Shown here: one piece after another, positions 1,085 to 58,954 of the stretch
How positions within the stretch are numbered: position 1 is the stretch's first letter
Layout of the letters: every line of letters starts with the position of its first letter
Origin: Octopus bimaculoides
Lineage: Eukaryota
Length of the DNA stretch: 64,000 nucleotides
Direction of reading: 5' to 3'
NCBI RefSeq assembly: GCF_001194135.2
Contig: NC_069004.1
Coordinates: 2,083,968 to 2,147,967 of the forward strand
Position numbers and translations under genes: made by a program
Notes under the pieces: model-generated
What the model saw: only the letters and a program-made list of their open reading frames with translations
Told to the model about the DNA's origin: nothing
Databases searched by the model: none

Positions 1085-1645
1085 ATGGCGAACGATTCGT
1101 TTCTTAATGTTAACCACGATTATAAGCTAAATAAAAAAAGGCAGACATTTAAACCGCGTCAGCCGGAGTATGAACTGGTAGTGACGACTAGAGGCGGACA
1201 ACTCTTGGCCTTAAATGGCTATTTGTTTCGTCTTAACTATAAACGTAAAGACAGAATTTACTGGAAGTGTAAAACATTGGGTTGTCTCTCTAGTGCTGTC
1301 ATGTCGAACAAACAAGAACTAATATCGTTTAGAGAAAACCACAATCACAGCAACGATCGGCCTTCCATACGTAACAGGTCGACTGCGAGTTCTTCGAAGA
1401 GATTACCAAAACCCGCGAGGCGTTTACTGAAAACCCCAAACATTGATGGGCTTCCGTTAAAATTCCAGGATGATCAGCAAAGTGCCCTTACTAACAGCAC
1501 ATCTCTACAGTTGGAACATGCCATCAAGACAGAAGTTGTTGCCGCTAACTTAATCTCCGCTTATGAATCTTCGTCCTACCTACCTGGAATTAACTGGGAT
1601 GCCAATCAACAAATCACAACTATTGCTGATGTCAAGTATGGGAAG
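1085..1645 (+). CDS. Variable 5' coding exon V1: FLYWCH zinc-finger domain (187 aa), predicted to splice to the BTB constant exons
   Basis: ATG at 1085 preceded by acceptor tttgctacag|1072, with an in-frame TGA at 1055. Translation ...TTRGGQLLALNGYLFRLNYKRKDRIYWKCKTLGCLSSAV...ENHNH matches the FLYWCH pattern (G-Y-x-F/Y, YWxC, C, HxH). Phase-0 donor AAG|gtatgt at 1645/1646. Confidence 0.82.
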
Positions 1646-7525: not shown

Positions 7526-8344
7526 NNNNNNNNNNNNNNNNNNNNNNNNNNNNNNNNNNNNNNNNNNNNNNNNNNNNNNNNNNNNNNNNNNNNNNNNNNN
7601 NNNNNNNNNNNNNNNNNNNNNNNNNNNNNNNNNNNNNNNNNNNNNNNNNNNNNNNNNNNNNNNNNNNNNNNNNNNNNNNNNNNNNNNNNNNNNNNNNNNN
7701 NNNNNNNNNNNNNNNNNNNNNNNNNNNNNNNNNNNNNNNNNNNNNNNNNNNNNNNNNNNNNNNNNNNNNNNNNNNNNNNNNNNNNNNNNNNNNNNNNNNN
7801 NNNNNNNNNNNNNNNNNNNNNNNNNNNNNNNNNNNNNNNNNNNNNNNNNNNNNNNNNNNNNNNNNNNNNNNNNNNNNNNNNNNNNNNNNNNNNNNNNNNN
7901 NNNNNNNNNNNNNNNNNNNNNNNNNNNNNNNNNNNNNNNNNNNNNNNNNNNNNNNNNNNNNNNNNNNNNNNNNNNNNNNNNNNNNNNNNNNNNNNNNNNN
8001 NNNNNNNNNNNNNNNNNNNNNNNNNNNNNNNNNNNNNNNNNNNNNNNNNNNNNNNNNNNNNNNNNNNNNNNNNNNNNNNNNNNNNNNNNNNNNNNNNNNN
8101 NNNNNNNNNNNNNNNNNNNNNNNNNNNNNNNNNNNNNNNNNNNNNNNNNNNNNNNNNNNNNNNNNNNNNNNNNNNNNNNNNNNNNNNNNNNNNNNNNNNN
8201 NNNNNNNNNNNNNNNNNNNNNNNNNNNNNNNNNNNNNNNNNNNNNNNNNNNNNNNNNNNNNNNNNNNNNNNNNNNNNNNNNNNNNNNNNNCATCATCATT
8301 TAACGTCTTTTGTCCATGCTGGTATGGGGGTTTGTCTTTGTGCT

Positions 8345-9014: not shown

Positions 9015-9233
9015 GCACCAGCTTAATAATAATTAGTAAAATTATATTGAAATGGTCATTTAATAATTATTTCTTCAGTTTTGGCTACATTGCCAATCTA
9101 TGATAACATAGTTATTTCTGTAAATATATCCTACTTCTGAAGGAATACGTATTCTACCCCCCTCCTCGTTTTGTCTTCCTCAACGTTTAATTAGTTAACT
9201 AACTAGCTGACTTGTGTTATTGTCTGTAGTTGG

Positions 9234-9259
9234 GCCGCCATTCTATCGTCATGGCGGAC
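9234..9259. promoter_or_regulatory. Inverted pair of YY1-like motifs (GCCGCCATT / CATGGCGG) upstream of exon V3
   Basis: gccgccattctatcgtcatggcggac in a locally CpG-enriched stretch of otherwise AT-rich DNA. Confidence 0.35.
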
Positions 9260-9557
9260 TAATCTTATATTTTTTTTTCTTTTGTGAGTGAAGCGGTCAG
9301 CAACATATAAGGATATAGTGATGTGTATGATAGACTGAGAGAGATAGTGGGAGAGGTGCTATCGACTATTAATTTGCTTCTTTGCTTTCTTTAACAACGT
9401 ATAAGCAGAGTATTCCCAGAAATATATAGCTGTGTGAAAAAATTACAAGGAGAAAAAAAATCCGTGCAACTTTTATATAAATCTGTAATATTTATTTGGC
9501 TTCTATAGTGTTGGGGCACTATGTCTTCTCGTAGTGCTCACTACGCATCTATGTTGC

Positions 9558-9569
9558 CGTGACGTCACG
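9558..9569. promoter_or_regulatory. Perfect palindromic CRE (cgTGACGTCAcg) just 5' of the V3 start codon
   Basis: TGACGTCA at 9560-9567 inside a 12-bp palindrome. Confidence 0.4.
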
Positions 9570-9606
9570 CTACTAGAACGTAGTGCCGTGCGGAAGAAGG
9601 TTACTA

Positions 9607-10914
9607 ATGGCTTCCAATCCACTAGATTCGTCGTCGCCGACTCCTCCGCCGTGCACTTCTACTGCAAACTCTCTGCTTGCTAGCACTAACATTCCTTTAC
9701 AATCGGCTGGAGTTATTCACGAAGATGTCCCTCTATTGGTCATGCCTCCACCATCGAAAGAACCCCAGCAGTATGACAGTAAAAAAACGAAAGAAGCCAC
9801 CAAGTACAGCGCGAAAATATTCCGTGACTTCTGCCATAGCCGTGGCATCAATACTGCCATTGAAGATATGGCCAAGAGTGAGTTGGATGAACTGCTCTCT
9901 GACTTTTACATCAATGTCCGTACACAAGGCGGTCAGTTTTATAGTTTTTCATCGTTAGTTGCACTTCGCCATGGACTAAACCGTTACCTGAAAACTGTGA
10001 ACATCGTCAACGACCCGGCATTCCGTAAATCGAACATGTCGTTTAAAGTAGCTTTGAAACGACTGAAAGAAGCTGGCAAAGGGTCGATTGAACACAAAGA
10101 GCCGATCAGTCAGGCTGACATGGCTACTCTCTATTCCCATAGCCAGGTGTTTAACCCCAACACACCAGAAGGCCTTCTCAATAAGGTCTGGTTCGAAATT
10201 ACATTTTATTTCTTTCGTCGGGGACAGGAGAACCAACGCTATCTCACCCCTCACCATTTTGGTTTTAGTACGGATGAATATGGTCGAAAATACGTTTACA
10301 AACGGAAATCATTGTCTCAATACACCAACGGATGTAATATCGAATCGAACAGCTCGCCGTTATCTCCAGACTCCAGTCGCAGTGCGAGAATGTATGCTAC
10401 AGGTAATGCCGTATGTCCAGTGGCCACGTTCGAGCGCTACCTTCGTAAGCGAAACCCGCACGAGTTAGCTCTGTTCCAGCATCCTCGGACCACATCCTTC
10501 CAGGACTCCATCTGGTATAATGCATCTCCACTAGGAAAAGAAGCTTTGTCCACGATGATGAAAAGGATAGCGCTTACAGCCAAACTCTCTCGTGTCTATA
10601 CAAACCACTGCATCCGTGCAACCGCGAAGTTCGTCCTCTTTCAGGTGTTCGATGCATTTCAGTTCGATCCCCAGCAAGGTACTAGCAGCTCTTTGACGAC
10701 ACCCTCTCAGTCGCTTGCTTTGCCCGGTATCAGTTCGATATCTGGTCTAAACACCCTGTCGTCCCATGAAATGCAGGCGACCCACGATGCAAACGCGGGT
10801 TCCATAAATTACAGCCCGCACCCGTCGGGTCTGCGTGTGTCAATGGTACAGAGCGATACTGACAACGCTTTCCCCCACCTGCCTAATTTGAGTGAAATCG
10901 CTCTGAACCGACAG
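9607..10914 (+). CDS. Variable 5' coding exon V3: DUF3504 / Crypton tyrosine-recombinase-derived domain (KIAA1958/ZMYM/QRICH1/KCTD1-like), 436 aa
   Basis: ATG at 9607 with in-frame TAG at 9574. Motifs TKEATKYSAKIFRDFC, LDELLSDFYINVRTQGGQFYSFSSLVALRHGLNRYL, LLNKVWFEITFYFFRRGQENQR, CPVATFERYLRKRNP, WYNASPLGKEALSTMMKRIA and YTNHCIRAT are typical of DUF3504 proteins. Phase-0 donor CAG|gtaagt at 10914/10915. Confidence 0.85.
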
Positions 10915-12645
10915 GTAAGTGCTTGTTTTCGTGTTCCTATCATCCGCTTAAAATACCTGGTCCTCAATATTAAATCCTGGCAAGATTTGTTTTGTGTTCG
11001 TGTCATCATGGTGGGGCACACACATACACACTTCACCCCGCTCCCTGTGTTTATACATCTGCACCTTTTATATACACCTGTCGACATACATATACACACA
11101 AGTGCCTTTGTTTATATTAAATACAATTTCGAAAATGTTATTTAAACTATTTTCTTTTTAACAACCAAAATATTTCTGAATTGCAAATTTATTGGAAAAG
11201 TATCTTTTGTGTTTCTATAATACATATGTTGTATAATTTAATAATGCAGTGTTTAATATGTTGTATAATGTGGTGTCTTTGGTTTTACTATATTCACAGT
11301 TGATATATTATACCATATTTAATGTGTCTCTGAGCATTGATCACGTTTTCAATAGTTTATTCATCTTTTGTTTATATAGTTCTAGAAAACAACTGTAAGA
11401 TGGTGATATTTTAACGTGCGTGCGTGTGTGTGTGGTGTAGGTATATATATATATATATATNNNNNNNNNNNNNNNNNNNNNNNNNNNNNNNNNNNNNNNN
11501 NNNNNNNNNNNNNNNNNNNNNNNNNNNNNNNNNNNNNTGTGTGTGTATATATATATATATGTATATATATATCGAAAAATTTACCTATATATCTACACAC
11601 ACACACACACACACTATAAGTGGTTGGGTAAGGAGACCTTATAATTAAAGGTGTTCCCGCAATGACCATTCCGTCTTCTCGGGCATTTCGTATCCCAGAT
11701 TATATATCCAATATGTTCCCCACCTTTTTTAAAGGCAACTTTTTTTTGGTTGCTATCTCTAGTAGGTCGAGTCCTCTTGTAGAGGGGACCCATCGTTGAT
11801 CTGTGTGTGTGTGTGTGTGTATTTATATGTGAGGTGGTGTAAGGGGTTTCGTATTTGATTCGTTACTTGCCGTATGTCTTCATACATCACTGTTTTTGTT
11901 TACATTTTAACAGAGGTTGACAAAGAAAAGCGACTTGCTTAAGAGGTAGTTCTTCAAATATATATCTGCTGTAGCTTAACGATTTTTAAAGAAATTTCCA
12001 ATTATTGATCTTCTTAGATGATTGATTTCTATAGTAACACTGATTTTAGAACCCTTCAGAAATTCAATTCCCTGATGTTATTTTCATAGAACAAGAGCAA
12101 AATGTCTATCTAAACTTGGGTGAGTTTTTTAACTTCCTTTTTTCCCCAAAAAATTTATGTTAAACCGATAGAAACTCTTCGGTTAAGTAACGATAGAAAT
12201 CTAATTAAACAAATCTATATTTTATAAAGGAAAGGGAGTATCTCAATTGAACCGATCCCTCTTGTTTTATCGATTTTTGGTAGGGTTGCGTTGAAAACTC
12301 GTCGATTCTGGCGAGATTTGAATGAAGCTGATTTCAGTTATTGTGAAGCATTTTATGTAATTTTTGAAATTCTGTGCAAATGATACAAACAATGATCGTC
12401 GTTTATTGAAGCTTCAGTTTTAAAGGGTGGAAATAAATTCTGTTTTGTAAGCAAAACTGGGTTTGTCGACTCGATTCATCGAGAAGAACTCGGCACCGCA
12501 GTGCGTCACCCCCAAACACAACACCATTTGAGGACGGCGGTTGGATGGCATAGACACAGGAAATAACGAGTACGGGTACGAAAGTACCGCGAGTAAAATT
12601 ATAGAAATATAATTTTGATCAAGTCAGTCTCTTGTTCCTCTGCAG

Positions 12646-12663: not shown

Positions 12664-15600
12664 GCAAGTTATGGTTTTCTTGAAGACCCGGTGCACCCAC
12701 AGGCAAGACTCAGTAGGAAGGGACTGGCTCAATCAAAATTATATATATATAATCTCTATTATTGTATTGAGTCACCTGTTTCCAACAGTCAATACTAAGT
12801 GGTGTGTGTGTAAGGTAGAATCGATTTTATCCATCAACTTCCATGTTGGTTTTTTGGGTTTTTTTAAAAAATTCTTTCATGCTTCTCGTTATTTTGGATC
12901 CTACTTGATAACAGAAATGCTATCTGTCTTGCTTATACATCATTGTCTCCATACTGTAGGTAGTTTATTTACTTGGCTAAGCCTAGCGGATAGATCGGTG
13001 AAGTTTGGCATATTGTTGAATCCTCAGTTAATCAATTACGTGTAAAATTAATTGATTTTAAAATTAAGATTCGGGTTATCTATATTAAAACATCGGCGTT
13101 TGATTCGTTACAGTACTATGCTGTTTTAATATTTGTCGAATCAACTCCTAATAAAAGAAATTAAAATGTACCCGTACACACAGTGAAAGAACTGCTGGTA
13201 CAATCATATATATACGAGCGAGTCAGGGAATGTTACCTATCACTTGACTAACTTAATTTTCTTTATTTCAGTCGGTATATATATATGTATGTAATTTTGA
13301 TGATAGATAAAACTTAAACAAAATCAAGAAAGAATTGCCGTATTGAGCGGGCCAACAATTTAACGGTTGCTAGTGTTGGTGAAAAAAAAAAAAAAAAAAA
13401 AAAANNNNNNNNNNNNNNNNNNNNNNNNNNNNNNNNNNNNNNNNAAAAGAAACACACGCCCGAAAGATAAATGAAATTATTTTATGGGGTTAAATATTAA
13501 AAGATAGGATAATGAAGTATTTACGTTGGCAAATTATGTTGATAACATTCGCGAACAGCTTGTATGTGTGACAACACGCTTCTTTAAAATAAGTTTTGGG
13601 AAGAAAAAAACGAAGAAAAATGTGACAAAGATAATTGTTTTATTTTATTGTCATAAATGTCTCAGATCTTTTACTTGTTTCAGTCACCGGGCTATGGCCA
13701 TGCTAGAGCATCACCTCGAAGGGTTTAGGCCATCAAATCGACCCCACTTTTTATTTCTAAGCGTGGTTCACTTCTTATTCTGTCGGTTTCTTTTGCCGAA
13801 CTGCTATATTACGGATGACGTAAACAAACCAACGCTAATTGTCAAGAAGTAGGGGTGGGGACATCACCGCCACCACTACCATCATCATCATCATCAAGGA
13901 TAAGTCTATTGTTCAACCCTTGCATGGGTTTGACGGAATTTTTTGTTCAGGTAGATCTTCAATGATTCCATTGCTCACAACTCCCCTTGTCTCTCCTAGA
14001 CCAAGATGACTGATATAGAAGCCTAGTATCTCAAATGAACTCCCCAAAAACCTAGTGTGGAGCAACAGAATATTAGTGATAAAACAGTAAACAGGAGGAC
14101 ACCATAGAGATGACGTGCTGTTGACTATCTGGACATTATAAAAAAAAGAAATGCAAAAGGCAGCGTTGTACCACATATGGTAAACTACTTCTTGCTAAAG
14201 CGTACAGTGTGTTACTCTGAAGCTGCTTGGAATATCTGGATTGCTGGAACTGGAAGTTCACATCTGGTTGAAAATCTTCAATTGATCATGATGCTACAGT
14301 AGGTGTAAAAAGATAACTTTTATTTGGATAAAAACTACTAAATTGTGTTTCTTCTGTGAATAGAATCAATTCAATTTTGATGAATCTTTACATTTCCTTT
14401 CTGATATGTAAAGACAGTGAGATACGCTTAATCCTAAAGCATTTCTGCTTCATTCCTTATGGATAGGACTTTCAAGGGAAGTGGGATGGGGCAGTCCAAA
14501 AAACCACAATGGCTTTTTGTCAAGTCCAGGCTCATTTTAGCAATGCAATTGCTAAAATTACCACCTCCTTATATAGAGATACAGTATTGAAGAATTTATC
14601 TGGCTTGTTTATTTGTATTTGTGTACGAGTGGGATAGTGAAAATATTGTTCATTTTGTATTTCATTTACCTTTTCAAAGTATCTTGTGAGTAGTTCATTT
14701 CTTTGAAACAAAGGATTATTTTGTAATGCACCAGAACTTTCTCTCGTGAATCTTCATCAGATTTTTGGTTTCTTTTACTCTTTTCATTTGAATGGAAGCA
14801 TTTCATTTCATTTTTCAATTAGAAGGCTTTTTGTTTGTCTAGTTTATCCGGTTAAACGATTTGAGGTTATTTTCATCCTTGTTGTATGAAAATTGTTATT
14901 CTATCTTTGGGAATATTTTTAGGAAGCTTGCTTCTTCTCCTTGGAAAATATCTGAGTTTAGCTTGCATTAATGACATAAAATGCTTCAGTATCCTTTCGT
15001 TATCTTGCATACAACCTCTTTTAATCGGGCTGCTTGTTGTTGAAATGCTGAGCTATAAGGATCACATATTCTAGGTTTTGATCAGAGAAGATTATAGGGG
15101 TTATTCATTGCTATTTTAATGTATTCTACATTATTTGTGAAGAGGAGATTCAGTGTGGTGTTGGCTCTTAGTAAAGAGGACCATCAATGATGTTTACCAT
15201 TTTTCCAAATAAAATATGTGCAAAGGGAAGATAACTCCCGTTAGAACAATGGCTTGGAATCTGTGCCTGTTTTAAGCCAAGGTGCTGCACTGTGGGACTG
15301 AACCTGAAACCACATATGCGCCTATGTTAGAAATTTCTATTACTGTTACCATTAGTGGTATTAAGGTTTGTGGTTTTTATATTTTTGTTTATTTATATCT
15401 TGCTTGGTATTGGAGCCATTTGGATTGTTGCTAAAAATGTGGAGCTACCTGTAGATTCCTTGCAGTTGTAATGGTTGGCTGTTTACTTTATCAAGCTTAT
15501 GTAATTGTTATGGAGCTTTAACTGCAGAAGATCAGCCTGGAAATGTGTTGTGGCATAAAAGTTTAAAGAGATAAAAGACTGATTTGGTATGGTGGGATCA

Positions 15601-16136: not shown

Positions 16137-16282
16137 GAGGCAATGGAGGTTCAGTCAGCTGTAGCTGCAGCCACTGGCACTATTATTGGTCAGCCTGAAG
16201 TTGAGACTTATGAACCAGAACCAGTACACACAATCCAAAATTCCAAGATAAGAATAAATCAGGAAAAAGATTTGTCCGTAAG
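16137..16282 (+). CDS. BTB gene constant exon C1 (EAMEVQSAVAAATG...QEKDLSVS)
   Basis: Acceptor tttaatttgcag|16137, open in phase 0, internal ATG at 16143. Donor AG|gtaaga is phase 2, matching the next exon. Confidence 0.75.
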
Positions 16283-16980: not shown

Positions 16981-17131
16981 CTTTTCCGCTTCTTCCCGCC
17001 CTGCAACCATCTTCAAAAAAACCTATGTCGATCCAGAACATGCAGATGGTATGATGAAATCATTGGCAAGTTTATGGAGGAAGAGGCGTTTATGTGATGC
17101 TAAAATTTGTAGTGGAAATAAAAATGTGATT
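16981..17131 (+). CDS. BTB gene constant exon C2, N-terminal part of the BTB/POZ domain
   Basis: Acceptor gtatcaacag|16981 (phase 2). Translates to ...YVDPEHADGMMKSLASLWRKRRLCDAKICSGNKNVI, the canonical BTB start (H...L..L...LCD). Donor ATT|gtaaga is phase 0. Confidence 0.85.
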
Positions 17132-17754: not shown

Positions 17755-18687
17755 TTACATCGTTTGGTTCTGTTTGCTGCCAGTCCTCACTTGATGGAAA
17801 AAAATATTACCGATGGTGCTGACTTGGAAGTGAATCTTCCACCAGGGATTAGTGAAGATGGACTGAAAATATTTGTCAGCTTTCTCTATGACGGTGTCCT
17901 TAATCTTAACGAACATCTGTATAAGGATGTCGAACGAATATCTAATCTGTTAAAAGTTGATAAAATTCAGAAACACTGCCGAGAGTTTGCTGCCAGTCTA
18001 AACGAACACAAGCAAATGACCAGCTCCCCGTCGACGTTGACGCCACGCCACCGAGATTCTCTTCCCAAGTCACAGAGTAATCGTCAAACAGTGGTATTGA
18101 CATTGAGTGATGATTCTAATCCTGCTGATGTAGCTTTTGACAACCAAGAACAGAATGTAGGTTTGTCGCATTCTCACCTGGAAGAAGTTCATAATTCACT
18201 GCTCGATGAGAGGATTCAATCTCTAAACGAACAGCATAATTATTTAACCTCTCACCAAAATCAGTTTCCTTCCACTTCCCAAGCCTCTTCCATGTCTCTA
18301 CAGAGTAGCAGTTCAGTCAGTGCCATTCCTTCTGAATGTGGTATCAAAACTGAACCAATTGAGATCTTAGACGATGACGTTACAGACTACAATCTATCTC
18401 AAGAGGACATTAAACAATGCAAACCCAGTATCAATCAGAGTGGCAAAGGTTACTCGGACGACAGTTCCAACTCGGAACCCCATAGACGATCATCTCAAGG
18501 GCACATTTCAAGTAAGGTTACAAGAACTTATATGACACCTAGTAAATGTGAATCAGGCATAGAGTTGGCTCCAATGGAAAGTATTTCTACTTGTGCCACC
18601 ACTGGGGCATCACCCTATCCAGTCAGTTTAGTAGCTTCATCTGGAGAGACGTTCCCACTTTATACCTTATCGTCCAATCAATCCTGA
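17755..18687 (+). CDS. BTB gene terminal constant exon C3: rest of the BTB domain plus a Ser/Gln-rich tail, stop at 18687
   Basis: Acceptor tttcttttccag|17755. LHRLVLFAASP...ISEDGLKIFVSFLYDGVLNL...VERISNLLKVDKIQKHC matches the ZBTB/Tramtrack-type BTB (HRxVLxAxS, F.Y.G.L). No C2H2 or other finger motif occurs before TGA. The three constant exons total 409 aa. Confidence 0.88.
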   Translation, partial: LHRLVLFAASPHLMEKNITDGADLEVNLPPGISEDGLKIFVSFLYDGVLNLNEHLYKDVERISNLLKVDKIQKHCREFAASLNEHKQMTSSPSTLTPRHRDSLPKSQSNRQTVVLTLSDDSNPADVAFDNQEQNVGLSHSHLEEVHNSLLDERIQSLNEQHNYLTSHQNQFPSTSQASSMSLQSSSSVSAIPSECGIKTEPIEILDDDVTDYNLSQEDIKQCKPSINQSGKGYSDDSSNSEPHRRSSQGHISSKVTRTYMTPSKCESGIELAPMESISTCATTGASPYPVSLVASSGETFPLYTLSSNQS

Positions 18688-26259: not shown

Positions 26260-28628
26260 TCAGATACTTAAACTATCTTCAATGGATTTGAATTCTTCAT
26301 CGAGCTTCTGCTGATTGCGAAGATATTCGGTGTAGAGAGTCCTCGCTTGGTGAAGAACTTTGTGAACATTTTGTTTGCGAGTTAATCTCTGGAAATACAT
26401 ATCTATCTCTTCACATTCCAGTTTCTTGTTAATGATTAAATCACGGTGTTGGAGGAGAATAGTTAGGCAAAGGAACATGAGAAATGGGTTGCCGGCGCCA
26501 AAATCCTGTGGTGGAGGCAGTTTCTGCGACCGGTCCAGTGTAGCATTTTCATTTACAGGAGTAGTAGTAGTAGCAGTAGTGATGGTATTGGTGTTGGTAA
26601 TGTTAGTTGGCGAAGAAGCAGGATTAGAAATGGTGGTGGTCACACCAGTGGAACCATTTACAGCGAGCTGGGATGGGGAGCTGGCATCAAAGGAGGAATG
26701 GGTCGAGGCAGAGTCTGCCGGGGGAGGGTAAGGAGGAGATGACAATGAAGATGACGACGTTGAAATATTGGAAGGCGGCAATGGAAGTGGAGGTATGTCC
26801 GGATGTTGCAATGCTTGCAAGGAACAAGGGACTGTAGGAAGATGGGATGTGTCCCCACTGGCAGGTGACTCGCTTGGCGTAACCATCTGAGATGATGCCA
26901 CAGACGAAGAAGAAGTAGATAGAATGGAGTCGTTAGTGTGCACTTTTTTCATTTGTGATGGTGGTAGCGGCAGTGGAGGTGGTGGGAGTGTTAGTGGAAG
27001 TGATAGGGGGAGGGGAGGTTGGTTACCTGGAGATGGAGTTTTAACAGTTGATCTAAACTGTGGGCATTGTTGGCCAAATGATGTTGGAGTCCCGTTCTCA
27101 CTGTCAGTGGCATCGACATAGTCAGCATCCTCGGTGTGACTTTTATCACAGTTTGGAGACGTTGGAGTGACCATTGGCTTGGCTACGTTTAGAGACAGCT
27201 GAGCCGGTTTGTGCTTTACTTTTGTTTTGGTCTTTGGTACTTCAGAGACTGGGGAATGAAATGAACTGGATGGTTCCGTGGTTTGAAATTTCTCTACATT
27301 CTCAAGAGATAAATGAAACTGAGTGTCTTCGAAAGAACCGCTGTCTTTTATCCCACCCGAATCTGTTTTGTGACATGGATTGATGCTTCCGACACTTAAC
27401 TTGCTTTTACCTGATGAGGAAGAACTTTCAAATGCAAACACATCATCACTACCACCATGTGACTGAGGAGGAGGAGAACTGCACAACGACTTATCAATGC
27501 TTGAAGAACGAGCCTGCATCATCTTGGCTGTAGCATCCTCCATAGCTGGGAAATCTCCACCGGAGTAACTTTCTTCCATAGGTGAGACATCATGCTGATT
27601 AATTTGGATGTTGATGCAATTAGAAGATTTCTTCACTCCGTTCAGTCTCACATTTGACTCCGCATCAGTTGTCTTGTCGGAATCATAACTATTTGAATGT
27701 GCTACGTTTCGAGCTTTGGCAGCATCTTTTAAGCGGAGTGCAAGGAAATTGGCATACATACTCTGAGGGAAATTTAGTGTTGGGGATGAAGGTGAAGAAG
27801 AAATTAAACTAGGAGAATAATGCGGATCAGTGAGTTCAAGTTCAACAGCAGGCGGGTCTGGAGGTAGCGTACTCCACATCACCTCCAGCATATAAAGAGC
27901 ATCATCCAAGGGGAATTCACGCTTCAGTTCAAGAAGAAGCCATCGGAAGCAGAAAAGGTGATTTGGGCTGCTTTCACAGAGGTAAGTGTAGAATAGAGGA
28001 TCATAGAGTTGGAGAAGCAGTGACAAATGCTGTAGCTTGATCTTCATTGCTTGACCACTTGGATGAAAGTTAATCTTCATATGTTTCATCAAGCCACAGA
28101 AGCAAAGATATGCATGAGACTCGTCTTTCTGAACGACTAGTAAAGGTGAAGCTAAATCACTCATGCCCTGACAGTAGGAGATATCAGGATGTGTTACTGC
28201 ATAGGTTACTAAGATGTGAATTAAAGACAGGATATTGTTACTATCGTCCGACCCAGCATAAAACTTATAAGTCCGATCTGTTCTTAGCACATCCTTCTTG
28301 ACCACTGAAATGATGTTCTTGATTTCATCGGAGGCTGTGTCCGTCTCTAAATGTGCCTTCCATTGCTTTCGCACCTTGTAGTACTCCTGCTCCTTTCGTT
28401 TCAGGTAGTCATAACGCTCTTTCCCCGACATGTTATCAGGGAAAATATTCAGAAGATGCCGCCAGACCACTTTACGCAGCGATGGTTCAATACCACCTTG
28501 GTAAATACTCAGTCGGAGTTCCTGGGGTCTGATGAGATGTCCATCACCGTCTAAATAGTTGTGAAACTCCATATCAGTCATGGCTGGTTTCAATGCTTTC
28601 ACAGCATTATCTTCGTAAGATTTAAAAC
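26260..28628 (-). CDS. TBC1D25: TBC1 domain family member 25 (OATL1, Rab-GAP), terminal coding exon
   Basis: Acceptor ttttccctcag| at 28629/28628, phase 1. ...MTDMEFHNYLDGDGHLIRPQELRLSIYQGGIEPSLRKVVWRHLLN...IKKDVLRTDR-like R finger (VVKKDVLRTDR), YCQGMSDLASPLL Q finger and C-terminal FGAGNPFLMFLCL closely follow vertebrate TBC1D25. Confidence 0.93.
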
Positions 28629-29705
28629 CTGAGGGAAAATAGAAAAGAGAGGAAGTCAAAGATCTCCTTAAGTAATAAAGACAATGCTTTATATTATTGG
28701 GTTAAAAATTGTCAAACATTGAGCTAGCATTTATGCAGAGGTCATAGCTTACCACAAATCTTGTAGTGCATCTCTGAGTAAAGCTTTAGACTGCTTAGCA
28801 AGAAACTAGACACAATGATAAAGTACACTGCTAAGTGTAATCTATCCATCCATCTTCTCCACTCATTATTCTTGGAAGGGTTGCGAGAGTTGAGTCCTCA
28901 GGCACCTTCTCCATAGGGTCCTTTTAGAAGCGACCATCATTACACTTTCTGGCTGGATTCCCAAGCGTGACCAACTGAAACCATGGCCATTACCCAACCA
29001 TCTTGCCCTTGGTCTACTCCTAAGTCTCTTGCTGGCTGGCTTGGTTTGAAGAATCTTCCTGCAACATTCTAATCACATGCCTACAATATTGCTGCTGTAA
29101 CCTCTCAATGTGGAGAAGTAGGTATAATAAGGTATAAATTCAGTTTACGTAAACCTACGTAGTAGACACACAAACAGGTCAAATTTACCTCATTCTCTGT
29201 AGACAGAAAAAATGATGAGCAGTCTTAATGATTTTTCAATCCTTACTAGGGTCTACTCAGAGGTGCTGTGTCTATGTCACTTGTTCCAGTCCCAGAGAAA
29301 GAAGCCATTTTGTTTGTTACACACATCAAACGTTGTAGCTTCAGAGAAACGGGGTTACTAATTTGCATATCCTTAGTGTTAGTGCTGTGTAATATTCTCA
29401 ATGAATGAATTTCTGGGTGATACATCATCAGCATATTATCGAAAAATGATATCACTTTTGATATATAATAAGTGCTTAATTTATCATACTTTCTATAAGG
29501 GATATCACTGATTATTCTATTCAGTGTCTCATAGAATCCACTAAAGTATTGTCTGATTTAAAATTACATTCAGTTAAATAAAAATATTTACTCCAGTGCT
29601 AGAAACAGAAAACCTGAACAGAAGATGTAAAATTTCATAAAGTAATTATTTCATAAACTTTGTCAGTGTATGGTACATTTCTAGAATATTCTGAATAATA
29701 CCTAC

Positions 29706-57502: not shown

Positions 57503-58954
57503 ATGGAGAAGGAGGAAGAAATTACGCAAACTGTGGTGGACGATCAATTGGACGAACCAGAATCTCGCAAACTTTCTAAATCGCAACATAGAGCGAAACA
57601 ACGTAAAAATAAAACCGTGCGTGATCTTGAGCACGTGGTTTTTGGAGACGAAAGTGAAGTTGTTGATCAAATTGAGAAGAATTTTCGCTCAAAGAAAAAA
57701 TCTAGAAAACACAAGGTCAGAGAAGATGATGTTCCATCTACAAGAAAAGCTGCTTGGGAAGATTTAGATGACGAGGCTGAATATGAAAATAATGTGACTG
57801 TTGTGAGACCTTCCTTTCAGCTTTCATTGGAGATACCAAAATGGGCCAAATTGAAGACGACAGAGAAACGAAAACGTTCGTCAAAACAGACAAGTGATTC
57901 TGACGATGACGAAAATCGCGATGACAACCGTATTGGACTGTTACAAAGTACCGGTAATTACCTATCAAAATCGTCATCTCTTTCCAGCCTCACTATCCAA
58001 TTAAAGAAATGCACAGATGCAAATCGTGAAAATCCAAGTCAATATCTAACTGCCTCGGAATTCCACCCGAAATCTACCGTTCTTATGACGGCCGGCAGAA
58101 AGTGTCGTTTTAACCTTTTCCAAGTAGATGGAGAAAAAAACCGGAAAATTCACACTATTTTTGTCGATCGTCTTCCAATTAAATGTAGTCATTTCAGCCG
58201 TGATGGTCTTCAGGTCGTTTTGAGTTCAGGATACAATTATTTCTCTTATTTTGATATGGAGGCAGCCAAACTTATCAGAGTTCCACGATTTAATTCCATT
58301 GATAACAACAAATTGTCGGACTTCATTCTGTCACCCGATGGCCGTTACATAGTATTTTTTGGACAGTATGGTTATATGCATCTAGTCTCATCAAATTCCA
58401 AAGAATATCTTACAAGTCTTAAAATGAATGGGAGCGTGGATGCCGCAGCTTTCTCTAAAGACGGCCATAGAATGTTTTCGTTCGGAAGTGATGGTCAAGT
58501 TTACGTTTGGGACATGAACAGTCGGTGTTGCGTTCACAGATTCTACGACGATGGCTGCGTTAACGGTACAGCTGTTTGTGTGTCACCCAATAACAAATAT
58601 TTAGCCTGTGGTTCTGATTCAGGCGTGGTTAATATTTATGATGTTGATACGTGCATGACTTCGTTAACTCCTCCGCCTCAAAAGGCCGTTATGAATCTCA
58701 CCACGGAATGTAATTCATTGGTGTTTAATCATTCTAATGAATTCCTTGCTGCAACTTCGATCCATTCGGAAAAAGGTGTGAAATTAATCCATTTACCTTC
58801 CATGACTGTTTTCAGAAATTTTCCCGATTCTTTAGATACGGATATAACATATCCTCGGCTCCTGGACATTTCTCCAAATAGTGGTTATTTAACGATTGGT
58901 AATAATAAAGGACAGGCTTTACTTTACAGAATTAAACACTTCGGAAATTACTAA
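57503..58954 (+). CDS. UTP18: U3 snoRNA-associated protein 18 homolog (WD40, SSU processome), 483 aa, single coding exon
   Basis: LEHVVFGD, AAWEDLDD, LLQSTGNYLS, FHPKSTVLMTAG, FQVDGEKNRKIHTIF, GQVYVWDMNSRCCVHRFYDDG, ACGSDSGVVNIY, VKLIHLPSMTVFRNFP and C-terminal GNNKGQALLYRIKHFGNY follow UTP18. An acceptor ttaactttag lies 2 nt before the ATG. Confidence 0.93.
   Translation: MEKEEEITQTVVDDQLDEPESRKLSKSQHRAKQRKNKTVRDLEHVVFGDESEVVDQIEKNFRSKKKSRKHKVREDDVPSTRKAAWEDLDDEAEYENNVTVVRPSFQLSLEIPKWAKLKTTEKRKRSSKQTSDSDDDENRDDNRIGLLQSTGNYLSKSSSLSSLTIQLKKCTDANRENPSQYLTASEFHPKSTVLMTAGRKCRFNLFQVDGEKNRKIHTIFVDRLPIKCSHFSRDGLQVVLSSGYNYFSYFDMEAAKLIRVPRFNSIDNNKLSDFILSPDGRYIVFFGQYGYMHLVSSNSKEYLTSLKMNGSVDAAAFSKDGHRMFSFGSDGQVYVWDMNSRCCVHRFYDDGCVNGTAVCVSPNNKYLACGSDSGVVNIYDVDTCMTSLTPPPQKAVMNLTTECNSLVFNHSNEFLAATSIHSEKGVKLIHLPSMTVFRNFPDSLDTDITYPRLLDISPNSGYLTIGNNKGQALLYRIKHFGNY

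What the first reader, a model, noticed from the sequence alone, without database searches (positions are those of the whole stretch)
9607..10914. Catalytically truncated Crypton recombinase exon fused to BTB, convergent with vertebrate KCTD1
Seen: the ORF keeps the first catalytic Arg region (FFRRGQENQR) and the HxxR box (NHCIR), but the expected following G-H...Y segment is replaced by FVLFQVFDAFQFDPQQGTSSS and a Ser/Pro-rich tail. The second His and the nucleophilic Tyr appear to be lost. Established: DUF3504 proteins (ZMYM2/3/4, QRICH1, KIAA1958 and the long KCTD1 isoform) are domesticated Crypton recombinases, and long KCTD1 joins DUF3504 to a T1-type BTB. Inference: this is an independent DUF3504-BTB fusion using a ZBTB/Tramtrack-type BTB.
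Basis: partly seen in the sequence, partly recalled or inferred. Interest (0 to 1): 0.7.

Follow-up and report, generated by a model that had tools for sequence, protein, structure and literature searches.

The report
Tamed Crypton recombinase exon on octopus BTB gene
An octopus gene starts with an exon taken from a Crypton "jumping gene" enzyme that has lost its DNA-cutting tyrosine and is spliced onto a BTB protein-interaction domain; the exon is real, conserved and transcribed, so it is a clear invertebrate case of a transposon enzyme reused by its host.

Summary
Confirmed. Window 9607-10914 (+) is a 436-codon exon with a DUF3504/Crypton tyrosine-recombinase domain (Pfam E=6.8e-11). It keeps R205 and H334-x-x-R337. 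The second His is deleted and the nucleophilic Tyr is Pro366, whereas about 30 relatives keep R-H-R-H-Y.

The exon is colinear with intact recombinases, so it is degenerate rather than cut short. Its last ~80 residues are a disordered linker.

Spliced at CAG|gtaagt to 16137-16282, 16981-17131 and 17755-18687, it gives an 845-aa protein identical to RefSeq XP_014789876.1 (Octopus bimaculoides). O. sinensis and O. vulgaris have 845-aa orthologues.

Four Octopus species give dN/dS 0.03 (dS 0.23), with no indels. Conservation collapses just after the donor. An intron-free contig from a more distant octopod carries the same ...NRQ|EAMEVQ... junction.

The BTB is PF00651, not the KCTD type (PF02214). 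Fish KCTD1 DUF3504 domains form their own clade without octopus. So this fusion is independent of KCTD1.

Two qualifications apply. It is one of at least two alternative 5' exons, and four more DUF3504+BTB proteins exist in unnamed organisms.

Verdict: a new member of a known kind. It is already a predicted protein and is undescribed in the papers searched.

The parts
9169..9606 (+). Conserved non-coding block upstream of the ATG, read as promoter and 5' UTR of the Crypton-exon isoform. It holds a TATA-like TATATAAA at 9474-9481 and a palindromic CRE-like TGACGTCA at 9560-9567.
   Evidence: Four-species identity is 0.88-1.0, and the last 90 nt are 100% identical although coding dS is ~0.2. The transcript contig L016 aligns back to window 9502, so this stretch is transcribed as 5' UTR in a relative. 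An in-frame stop lies at 9574-9576.
9607..10914 (+). Exon 1: 436 codons, the Crypton-derived (DUF3504) first coding exon of LOC106883396, ending in phase 0.
   Evidence: Pfam PF12012 E=6.8e-11. The exon is exactly residues 1-436 of XP_014789876.1. dN/dS is 0.031 against O. sinensis, with no stops or indels in four species.
9769..10662 (+). Folded core (aa 55-352): a two-domain tyrosine-recombinase fold, made of an N-terminal helical 'QRICH1-type' domain and the DUF3504 catalytic-domain remnant.
   Evidence: AlphaFold2 pLDDT is above 90 over ~55-345. Foldseek matches QRICH1 in Zincore (9hjt_H, E=2e-7) and Cre recombinase (TM ~0.55 normalised to the target, E~2e-6). A profile search also hits QRICH1 and XerA.
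10219..10221 (+). Codon of Arg205, the first catalytic Arg in FFRRGQEN. Retained.
   Evidence: This column is invariant in alignment A2.
10606..10617 (+). H334-C-I-R337, the H-x-x-R box. Both catalytic residues are retained.
   Evidence: Fish KCTD1 has Gly at the Arg position.
10663..10914 (+). Degenerate box II plus a disordered Ser/Pro-rich linker (aa 353-436). The second His is deleted just after Gly358 (10678-10680). The Tyr column holds Pro366 (10702-10704). The linker ends in the conserved motif HLPNLSEIALNRQ.
   Evidence: Colinear BLASTP alignment to the intact recombinase P0003. Residue table. pLDDT is below 50 for residues 357-436. dN/dS is 0.065 and there are 0 in-frame stops against 5+5 in the other frames.
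10915..10920 (+). Splice donor GTAAGT after CAG.
   Evidence: Identical in four Octopus species. Downstream of it, identity drops to 0.36-0.74 with many gaps, and read-through ORFs stop after 8, 19, 67 or 77 codons depending on the species.
16137..16282 (+). Exon 2 (EAMEVQ...DLSV), a common exon. It has a phase-0 acceptor and ends in phase 2.
   Evidence: It matches O. sinensis X1 and X2. The acceptor is conserved in the ~70%-identity octopod L001. It is joined to upstream coding exons in transcripts L015 and L016.
16981..17131 (+). Exon 3, which holds the start of the BTB domain (17072-17131).
17755..18687 (+). Exon 4: the rest of the BTB domain (17755-17991), a low-complexity C-terminal half with the conserved end motif SPYPVSLVASSGETFPLYTLSSNQS, and the TGA stop.
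   Evidence: BTB PF00651 E=8.4e-10. dN/dS for exons 2-4 is 0.051, and 0.016 in the BTB. The closest solved BTBs are gigaxonin, ZBTB17/BCL6 and BACH1.
1085..1645 (+). Candidate additional alternative 5' coding exon: 187 codons encoding a FLYWCH zinc finger, with donor GGGAAG|gtatgt in phase 0. It is not in any annotated product.
   Evidence: Pfam PF04500 E=4.6e-12. dN/dS is 0.068 up to the donor and ~1.2 after it. The predicted FLYWCH+BTB product is absent from the protein collection.

Best explanation
Window 9607-10914 is the first coding exon of a single-copy Octopus gene, RefSeq LOC106883396 in O. bimaculoides.

Shown:
- The exon is a domesticated Crypton tyrosine recombinase.
- It keeps the Cre-like two-domain fold and three catalytic residues (Arg205, His334, Arg337).
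- It has lost the nucleophilic tyrosine (now Pro366) and the second histidine.
- It is under strong purifying selection.
- It has its own conserved upstream region.
- It is spliced in phase 0, through a disordered linker, to three common exons. These encode a PF00651 BTB/POZ domain and a conserved C-terminal tail, giving an 845-aa protein.
- The same BTB exons are also joined to a different 5' exon, which encodes an integrase H2C2-like zinc-binding module (O. sinensis isoform X2). The locus therefore makes BTB proteins with interchangeable, transposon-derived N-terminal modules.

Inferred:
- Without the tyrosine, the protein cannot make the covalent 3'-phosphotyrosyl intermediate, so it cannot cut or recombine DNA.
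- The recombinase remnant probably serves as a targeting clamp. It would bind DNA, or DNA-bound zinc-finger factors as the DUF3504 protein QRICH1 does in the Zincore complex.
- The BTB domain probably supplies dimerisation and partner recruitment (co-repressors or CUL3).
- The fusion arose when a Crypton inserted upstream of, or into the first intron of, a pre-existing BTB gene. This is the same route proposed for vertebrate KCTD1 isoform b, but it happened independently.
For: Identity of the domain:
- PF12012 E=6.8e-11.
- 50% identity to an intact Crypton-type recombinase, P0001.
- AF2 model plus Foldseek hits to QRICH1 and Cre.

Catalytic state:
- Octopus has R-H-R, a gap, then Pro; 30 relatives have R-H-R-H-Y.

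Gene model:
- Perfect donor, matching phases and an 845-aa product identical to XP_014789876.1.
- O. sinensis isoform X1 and O. vulgaris CAI9739953.1 are also 845 aa.
- The Pfam hits on record for the called genes are PF12012+PF00651.

Selection:
- dN/dS is 0.031 (dS 0.228; 59 synonymous against 7 non-synonymous changes).
- The core gives 0.018, the tail 0.065 and the BTB exons 0.051.
- There are no indels within the exon in four species, and conservation collapses immediately after the donor.

Transcription and splicing:
- The 3.2-kb intron-free contig L016 encodes MASNP...NRQ|EAMEVQ...SSNQS in one ORF, and was seen on 4 contigs.
- L015 shows that the alternative exon B-like to exon 2 junction is also used.

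Copy number:
- One contig per sequencing run for exon 1 in a third species.
- One copy in each genomic locus.

Alternative 5' exon:
- XP_029650370.1 isoform X2. Its exons lie just upstream of window position 1.

Independence from KCTD1:
-, together with Kojima & Jurka 2011 (PMC3212892).
Against: - I could not obtain a transcript from O. bimaculoides itself. The direct junction evidence comes from a relative with 78% protein identity. I could not inspect what evidence supports the RefSeq models.
- No function has been tested. DNA binding, the idea of binding zinc-finger factors, and the BTB partners are all inference from fold and from relatives.
- Deep nodes of the DUF3504 trees are unresolved (5-40% support). 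In one tree octopus sits next to the KCTD1 clade at 33% support. So a shared source Crypton lineage cannot be excluded, even though the fusions themselves involve unrelated BTB classes.
- Four other proteins combine DUF3504 with a related BTB. The octopus fusion may therefore be older or more widespread than 'octopus-specific'.
Confidence: 0.85

Rival explanations
1. It is a stand-alone, intronless KIAA1958-like gene, or a decaying Crypton copy, that merely sits in the first intron of a BTB gene. On this view the fusion is a gene-prediction artefact.
For: The ORF runs on past the donor to 11145 in O. bimaculoides. Exon 2 carries a conserved in-frame ATG in a good context (gcaATGg), so a BTB-only protein is conceivable. 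The exon lies inside the intron of isoform X2.
Against: The read-through ORF is not conserved: stops come after 8, 19, 67 or 77 codons and indels start right after the donor. No conserved stop codon follows the exon. dN/dS of 0.03 rules out decay. The intron-free contig L016 joins the exon to the BTB exons in one ORF. The 407-aa BTB-only product is not in the protein collection, whereas the 845-aa one is.
Confidence: 0.04
2. It is an active or recently active Crypton transposon whose recombinase uses another nucleophile.
For: R205, H334 and R337 are retained, and the fold is predicted with high confidence.
Against: The Tyr and the second His are missing in every octopod sequence examined. The C-terminal third of intact Cryptons, including the conserved N-x-C-x-V-T-I end seen in P0001, P0002 and P0110, is absent. 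The exon is single copy and sits at the orthologous position in four species.
Confidence: 0.01
3. The octopus gene is not an independent fusion of its own. It would belong to an older DUF3504-BTB(PF00651) gene family shared with other invertebrates, from one ancient capture, and the different N-termini seen in cuttlefish would simply be other isoforms.
For: P0089, P0189 and P0169 have DUF3504 at the N-terminus and a BTB at the C-terminus. Their BTBs are more similar to the octopus BTB than generic BTBs are (58-94 bits). P0189 and P0089 end with a similar P-[YF]-P-V-x-L motif.
Against: Their DUF3504 domains do not group with octopus in the NJ tree. P0089 pairs at 85% support with an intact Crypton (P0110) and still has its Tyr, which points to a separate capture. 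P0147 has the reverse domain order. The cuttlefish homologues found carry other N-termini. The organisms of these proteins are unknown.
Confidence: 0.25
4. The fusion is orthologous to vertebrate KCTD1 isoform b, that is, one ancient bilaterian fusion.
For: Fish long KCTD1 proteins are among the best matches at ~41% identity. Both lose box II at the same place. One tree places octopus next to the KCTD1 clade, but with 33% support.
Against: The BTB domains belong to different Pfam families (PF00651 against PF02214+PF20871). The KCTD1 clade has 90-94.5% support and excludes octopus. Octopus keeps Arg337, which KCTD1 lost. Kojima & Jurka place the KCTD1 insertion after the vertebrate KCTD1/KCTD15 duplication (PMC3212892).
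Confidence: 0.02

Closest known systems
Vertebrate KCTD1 isoform b (DUF3504 + T1-type BTB), Kojima & Jurka 2011 (PMC3212892)
   Same: In both, a Crypton recombinase is confined to a single 5' exon and spliced onto the BTB exons of a pre-existing gene as an alternative long isoform. Both have lost the Tyr. Divergence begins right after the H-x-x-R box at the same alignment position. Protein identity is ~41%.
   Different: The BTB here is PF00651, not PF02214, and there is no KCTD1-15 C-terminal domain. Octopus keeps the second Arg. The octopus domain lies outside the KCTD1 clade. The host is a cephalopod, not a vertebrate.
Other domesticated DUF3504 genes: KIAA1958, ZMYM2/3/4, QRICH1, WOC
   Same: All have a DUF3504 domain without a complete R-H-R-Y tetrad and are conserved as host genes. 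QRICH1 in the Zincore structure 9hjt is the best structural match.
   Different: According to Kojima & Jurka, all of those lost the Tyr and the second Arg, and all except KCTD1 also lost the His. Octopus retains R, H and R. The partner domains also differ (MYM zinc fingers, CARD/Q-rich region).
Intact CryptonA-type tyrosine recombinases (P0001, the Mytilus 'KIAA1958-like' P0002, P0003, P0110)
   Same: 37-50% identity over ~290 residues, the same two-domain layout, and the same R and H-x-x-R boxes.
   Different: Those have G-H...Y and a ~120-residue C-terminal part, match PF00589, and occur in several copies (cluster of 9-12 members). The octopus exon lacks all of these features.
Host-transposase fusion genes formed by alternative splicing ('transposase capture'; my own knowledge of Cosby et al. 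2021, not checked here)
   Same: A transposon-derived nucleic-acid-binding module is captured as an exon of a host regulator that supplies an effector or oligomerisation domain.
   Different: The documented cases are mostly DDE transposases in tetrapods. This one is a tyrosine recombinase in a mollusc, at a locus that seems to hold more than one captured module.
Drosophila mod(mdg4)/lola-type BTB loci (my own knowledge)
   Same: A constant BTB part is combined with variable DNA-binding modules. In mod(mdg4) those modules include FLYWCH, and a FLYWCH exon also lies in this locus.
   Different: The layout here is the mirror image: the variable modules are 5' exons and the BTB is C-terminal. Only two isoforms are documented. 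Use of the FLYWCH exon is unproven.

Membership tests
DUF3504 / Crypton-derived recombinase domain (PF12012) | Match to the Pfam model above its gathering score | tested here: met
   42.9 bits against a cut-off of 29.7, E=6.8e-11, profile positions 13-161 of 162
DUF3504 / Crypton-derived recombinase domain (PF12012) | Tyrosine-recombinase fold | tested here: met
   AF2 pLDDT above 90 for residues 55-345. Foldseek matches QRICH1 (9hjt_H, E=2e-7) and Cre (TM ~0.55, E~2e-6)
Domesticated (host) DUF3504 gene | Incomplete catalytic tetrad, with the nucleophilic Tyr lost | tested here: met
   The Tyr column holds Pro366 and the second His is deleted; R205, H334 and R337 are kept
Domesticated (host) DUF3504 gene | Orthologues at the same locus under purifying selection | tested here: met
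   Four Octopus species, dN/dS 0.03, no indels, same exon order in O. sinensis and O. vulgaris
Domesticated (host) DUF3504 gene | Expressed as part of a host mRNA | tested here: met
   The intron-free contig L016 from a related octopod has a single ORF spanning DUF3504 and BTB. No transcript was available for O. bimaculoides itself.
Active Crypton transposon | Complete R-H-R-(H)-Y catalytic set and a PF00589 match | tested here: not met
   No PF00589 hit for the window ORF, whereas P0001, P0002 and P0003 have one. Tyr and the second His are absent.
Active Crypton transposon | Multiple near-identical copies | tested here: not met
   One copy in the window and in each orthologous locus. One contig per sequencing run in the third species. 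The 90% cluster has only 3 members. Whole genomes were not searched.
BTB/POZ, PF00651 class | Match to PF00651 above its gathering score | tested here: met
   39.2 bits against a cut-off of 20.5, E=8.4e-10. The nearest solved BTBs are gigaxonin, ZBTB17/BCL6 and BACH1.
KCTD / T1-type BTB (PF02214); KCTD1 orthologue | PF02214 BTB_2 together with the PF20871 KCTD1-15 C-terminal domain | tested here: not met
   Neither family is hit by the octopus protein, while both are hit by fish KCTD1 P0007 in the same scan
KCTD / T1-type BTB (PF02214); KCTD1 orthologue | DUF3504 domain nested within the KCTD1 clade | tested here: not met
   The KCTD1 clade has 90-94.5% bootstrap support and excludes octopus. 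These are NJ trees and the deep nodes are weak.
ZBTB (zinc finger and BTB) transcription factors | C2H2 zinc fingers C-terminal to the BTB | tested here: not met
   Pfam finds only BTB in the 409-aa C-terminal part. No zinc-finger ORFs lie downstream before the convergent TBC gene.

The most novel reading that the evidence does not exclude
The octopus BTB locus may be a modular 'variable head, constant BTB' system. It would hold a tandem array of alternative 5' coding exons, each a different transposon-derived nucleic-acid-binding module:
- an integrase H2C2-like exon (documented, isoform X2);
- a FLYWCH exon (conserved, phase-compatible, unannotated);
- the Crypton recombinase exon (documented, isoform X1).

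All end in phase 0 and would feed one acceptor at 16137. Cuttlefish homologues carry yet other heads.

In addition, BTB genes of this family may have captured Crypton recombinases repeatedly in different animal lineages (P0089, P0189, P0169, and P0147 in the reverse order), in parallel with vertebrate KCTD1.
Probability: 0.35. Interest if true: 0.7.

Novelty: new member of a known kind. Interest (0 to 1): 0.5.

Why it matters
Domesticated Crypton recombinases (KCTD1b, KIAA1958, ZMYM2/3/4, QRICH1) are ancient, and their origins can no longer be traced step by step.

The octopus gene is a separate and apparently less degenerate case. It still has R, H and R and lacks only the second His and the Tyr. 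Intact relatives reach 50% identity, and there is a clear before-and-after architecture: the same BTB exons are used with other N-termini.

It shows that 'Crypton exon plus BTB' has arisen more than once. This argues that a dead tyrosine-recombinase clamp attached to an oligomerising BTB is a useful combination in its own right.

It also gives a tractable system for asking what DUF3504 domains bind. The recent Zincore work links QRICH1 to zinc-finger factors, which makes that question timely.

In practical terms, it gives a domain-level annotation to an 'uncharacterized protein' in three octopus genomes.

Tried and rejected
- The first homology search returned nothing above 50% identity and no PF12012+PF00651 protein. 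For a while I read this as absence of the exon from sister species and from a ~70%-identity octopod. That was wrong. The exact-sequence look-ups and the exhaustive HMMER search showed that the orthologues exist. The word-index search had not listed the window's own cluster or P0084. Absence from that list is therefore not evidence.
- I looked in the window for remnants of the lost Crypton C-terminus (another frame or the intron), for extra copies, and for the cuttlefish or O. sinensis X2 N-terminal exons (tblastn). None were found. The X2 exons lie just upstream of the window.
- I screened every + strand ORF between 1 and 16136 for further conserved coding exons. Only the FLYWCH ORF and exon 1 stand out.
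- Short direct and inverted repeats upstream of the ATG (CGTAGTGC twice, GTAGTGctCACTAC) are too short to interpret as recombination sites.
- A possible internal acceptor (ttcgtcctctttcag|GTG, ~10643) and donor (CAAG|gtacta, ~10688) inside exon 1 are not used in any model or transcript seen.
- A shared ~96-nt repeat is the only link between the P0001 locus and octopus DNA, so the source organism of the closest intact Crypton remains unknown.
- I could not name the organisms of P0089, P0147, P0169 and P0189.
- The first 200-taxon bootstrap run timed out. I repeated it with 57 taxa.
Full report
WHAT IS IN THE SEQUENCE

The window is AT-rich eukaryotic DNA with TG/TA microsatellites and assembly gaps. 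On the + strand an ORF runs from 9583 to 11145, with an ATG at 9607.

Its translation matches Pfam DUF3504 (PF12012) at 42.9 bits against a cut-off of 29.7, E=6.8e-11, over almost the whole model. It also matches the N-terminal 'QRICH1 domain' weakly.

At 10914 the ORF meets a perfect donor, CAG|gtaagt. GC falls from 0.53 in the last 285 nt of the exon to 0.38 after it. The tail has no stop in frame, against 5 and 5 stops in the other two frames.

CATALYTIC RESIDUES

A homology search found many relatives at 30-50% identity. Some carry a PF00589 phage-integrase match as well as DUF3504. Examples are P0001 at 50%, a Mytilus 'KIAA1958-like' protein at 43%, and P0003. The long KCTD1 isoforms of fishes match at about 41%.

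In the alignments, 30 relatives show R-H-R-H-Y at the five diagnostic columns. Fish KCTD1 shows R-H-G-x-x. The window protein shows R205, H334, R337, a gap where the second His should be, and Pro366 in the Tyr column.

BLASTP against the intact recombinase P0003 stays colinear through this region: FDA aligns with FEA and QQG--TSSS with VSGHRNEAS. The segment is therefore degenerate, not deleted. The word 'truncated' applies only to the roughly 120-residue C-terminal part of intact Cryptons, which is missing entirely.

THE FUSION

Downstream on the same strand are three exons with good splice signals and matching phases: 16137-16282, 16981-17131 and 17755-18687. Together they encode a PF00651 BTB domain (E=8.4e-10). 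There is no hit to PF02214 or to the KCTD1-15 C-terminal domain, although both are found in fish KCTD1 in the same scan.

The 845-aa product of the four exons is letter-for-letter XP_014789876.1, 'uncharacterized protein LOC106883396 [Octopus bimaculoides]'. Its 90% cluster holds the 845-aa XP_029650369.1 (O. sinensis LOC115223832 isoform X1), which is the same sequence as O. vulgaris CAI9739953.1. The window's UTP18 protein is also an exact database entry that clusters with the O. sinensis and O. vulgaris proteins.

IS THE EXON FUNCTIONAL AND REALLY SPLICED?

I fetched the orthologous DNA from O. sinensis (L008), O. vulgaris (L009) and a third species known only from Logan contigs (L010-L014).

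- Exon 1 is 1308 nt in all four species, without stops or indels.
- Against O. sinensis there are 59 synonymous and 7 non-synonymous differences: dS 0.228, dN 0.007, dN/dS 0.031.
- The folded core gives 0.018 and the non-catalytic tail 0.065.
- The BTB exons give 0.051.
- The donor is identical in all four species.
- Four-species identity is 0.8-1.0 with no gaps inside the exon. It drops to 0.36-0.74 with many gaps from 10915 onward.
- The read-through ORF ends after 8, 19, 67 or 77 codons depending on the species.

So coding ends at the donor and no conserved stop follows. The exon must be spliced to give a protein.

The 440 nt upstream (9169-9606) are even more conserved than the coding sequence, and the last 90 nt are identical in four species. 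This block holds a TATA-like box and a TGACGTCA palindrome.

Direct evidence came from the exhaustive HMMER search. P0084 is 78% identical and aligns in one stretch to residues 46-845. It is encoded on a 3212-nt Logan contig without introns. Its ORF reads MASNP...HLPNLSEIALNRQ|EAMEVQ...SSNQS, and its 5' part aligns back to window 9502. It carries the same degenerate box II. The Crypton-to-BTB junction is therefore used in mRNA of a more distant octopod, and the capture predates that split.

ALTERNATIVE 5' EXONS

O. sinensis isoform X2 (XP_029650370.1, 623 aa) joins the same exons 2-4 to a different N-terminus. UniRef annotates the O. vulgaris counterpart of that exon as KRBA2-like, and it matches Integrase_H2C2 weakly: E=0.0013, below the Pfam cut-off. 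In O. vulgaris its two exons lie just upstream of the point where the window starts. The Crypton exon therefore sits inside the first long intron of X2 and acts as an alternative first exon with its own upstream region.

A partly spliced transcript from another octopod (L015) shows the exon B-like to exon 2 junction.

Cuttlefish homologues have still other N-termini. One is the Sepia pharaonis protein named 'ZBTB24' together with transcripts L002/L003, which carry a C-C-H-H finger. The other is P0099.

STRUCTURE

With a 36-sequence alignment, AlphaFold2 gives pLDDT above 90 for residues ~55-345. Residues 1-46 and 357-436 are disordered.

Foldseek finds QRICH1 in the Zincore-ZFP91-DNA complex (9hjt_H, E=2e-7). 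It also finds some twenty Cre-DNA structures (TM about 0.55 normalised to Cre), followed by XerH, integron integrase, Flp and XerA. A sequence profile also reaches QRICH1 and XerA.

The BTB resembles those of gigaxonin, ZBTB17/BCL6 and BACH1.

MECHANISM

Shown: a recombinase fold without the nucleophile, under strong constraint, joined by a disordered linker to a dimerising BTB class.

Inferred: the module cannot form a phosphotyrosyl-DNA intermediate. It probably acts as a DNA clamp, or as a clamp on DNA-bound zinc-finger factors. The latter is the known role of the QRICH1-SEPHS1 'Zincore' coregulator (Bianchi et al. 2025, as cited in PMC13538652). The BTB would supply oligomerisation and partner recruitment.

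The origin matches the route that Kojima & Jurka proposed for KCTD1b, namely insertion of a Crypton upstream of a BTB gene that creates a new long isoform (PMC3212892).

INDEPENDENCE FROM KCTD1, AND WIDER DISTRIBUTION

In two NJ trees the fish KCTD1 domains form a clade with 94.5% and 90% support that excludes octopus. The octopod sequences form their own 100% clade. Deeper nodes are unresolved. Together with the different BTB family and the retained Arg337, this supports an independent fusion.

The architecture is not unique, however. Among the best 150 library representatives, P0089, P0189 and P0169 have DUF3504 followed by PF00651 BTB, and P0147 has the reverse order.

- P0089 still has the Tyr (R-H-R-Q-Y) and pairs at 85% support with an intact Crypton, P0110. 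This suggests yet another capture.
- Their organisms could not be determined.

NOVELTY

The gene is a predicted, unnamed RefSeq protein, and the Pfam hits on record for it are DUF3504 and BTB. Full-text searches found no paper linking DUF3504 or Crypton with a PF00651 BTB or with octopus.

It is a new member of a known kind, domesticated Crypton/DUF3504 genes. Its specific interest is that it parallels KCTD1b and lies in a locus with interchangeable transposon-derived heads.

Noticed in passing
window 1085-1645 (+); ORF 1058-1786: A FLYWCH zinc-finger ORF (PF04500, E=4.6e-12) lies in the same long intron and on the same strand. It is conserved in O. vulgaris, O. sinensis and a third species. 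dN/dS is 0.068 up to a conserved donor GGGAAG|gtatgt and ~1.2 after it. The exon ends in phase 0, compatible with the acceptor at 16137. The predicted FLYWCH+BTB product is not in the protein collection, so this may be an unannotated third alternative 5' exon.
   Followed up: partly
just upstream of window position 1; O. vulgaris L007 10001-10600 and 17293-17349; O. sinensis L008 from 3001: Isoform X2 of the O. sinensis orthologue starts with an exon whose O. vulgaris counterpart UniRef calls KRBA2-like. It has a weak Integrase_H2C2 match (E=0.0013, below cut-off) and is spliced to the same BTB exons. This is a second transposon-like head on the same gene.
   Followed up: partly
window 9169-9606: This non-coding block is more conserved than the coding sequence (0.88-1.0 identity across four species, and the last 90 nt are identical). 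It contains TATATAAA (9474-9481), TGACGTCA (9560-9567) and two copies of CGTAGTGC (9530, 9579). O. vulgaris has a separate 98-aa gene model that ends 45 nt before the ATG, which is probably a mis-called UTR.
   Followed up: partly
library proteins P0089, P0189, P0169, P0147: Four further cluster representatives combine a DUF3504 domain with a PF00651 BTB related to the octopus one. One has the reverse domain order. One (P0089) still has the catalytic Tyr and groups with an intact Crypton. Their source organisms are unknown.
   Followed up: partly
L002/L003 (Sepia-like transcripts), P0053, P0099: Decapodiform homologues of the BTB gene carry other N-termini: a C-x2-C...H-x5-H finger, or an unrelated 335-residue region. 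They also have an AT-hook-like GKRKRGRPSK that octopus lacks.
   Followed up: no
window 57503-58951 (+): A complete 483-aa UTP18 (U3 snoRNA-associated protein 18) homologue is encoded in a single uninterrupted exon. It is an exact match to a database protein.
   Followed up: no
window 26263-28701 (-): An 813-codon open frame with a RabGAP-TBC domain (PF00566, E=1.5e-34) on the opposite strand, convergent with the BTB gene.
   Followed up: no
one search compared: The word-index protein search did not list the window's own 845-aa cluster or the 78%-identical P0084. Negative results from that tool are not evidence that orthologues are absent.
   Followed up: yes
window 7526-8290, 11461-11537, 13405-13444: Assembly gaps (runs of N) and long TG/TA microsatellites flank exon 1. 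The 765-N gap lies 1.3 kb upstream, so the distal upstream region of the isoform is incomplete in this assembly.
   Followed up: no
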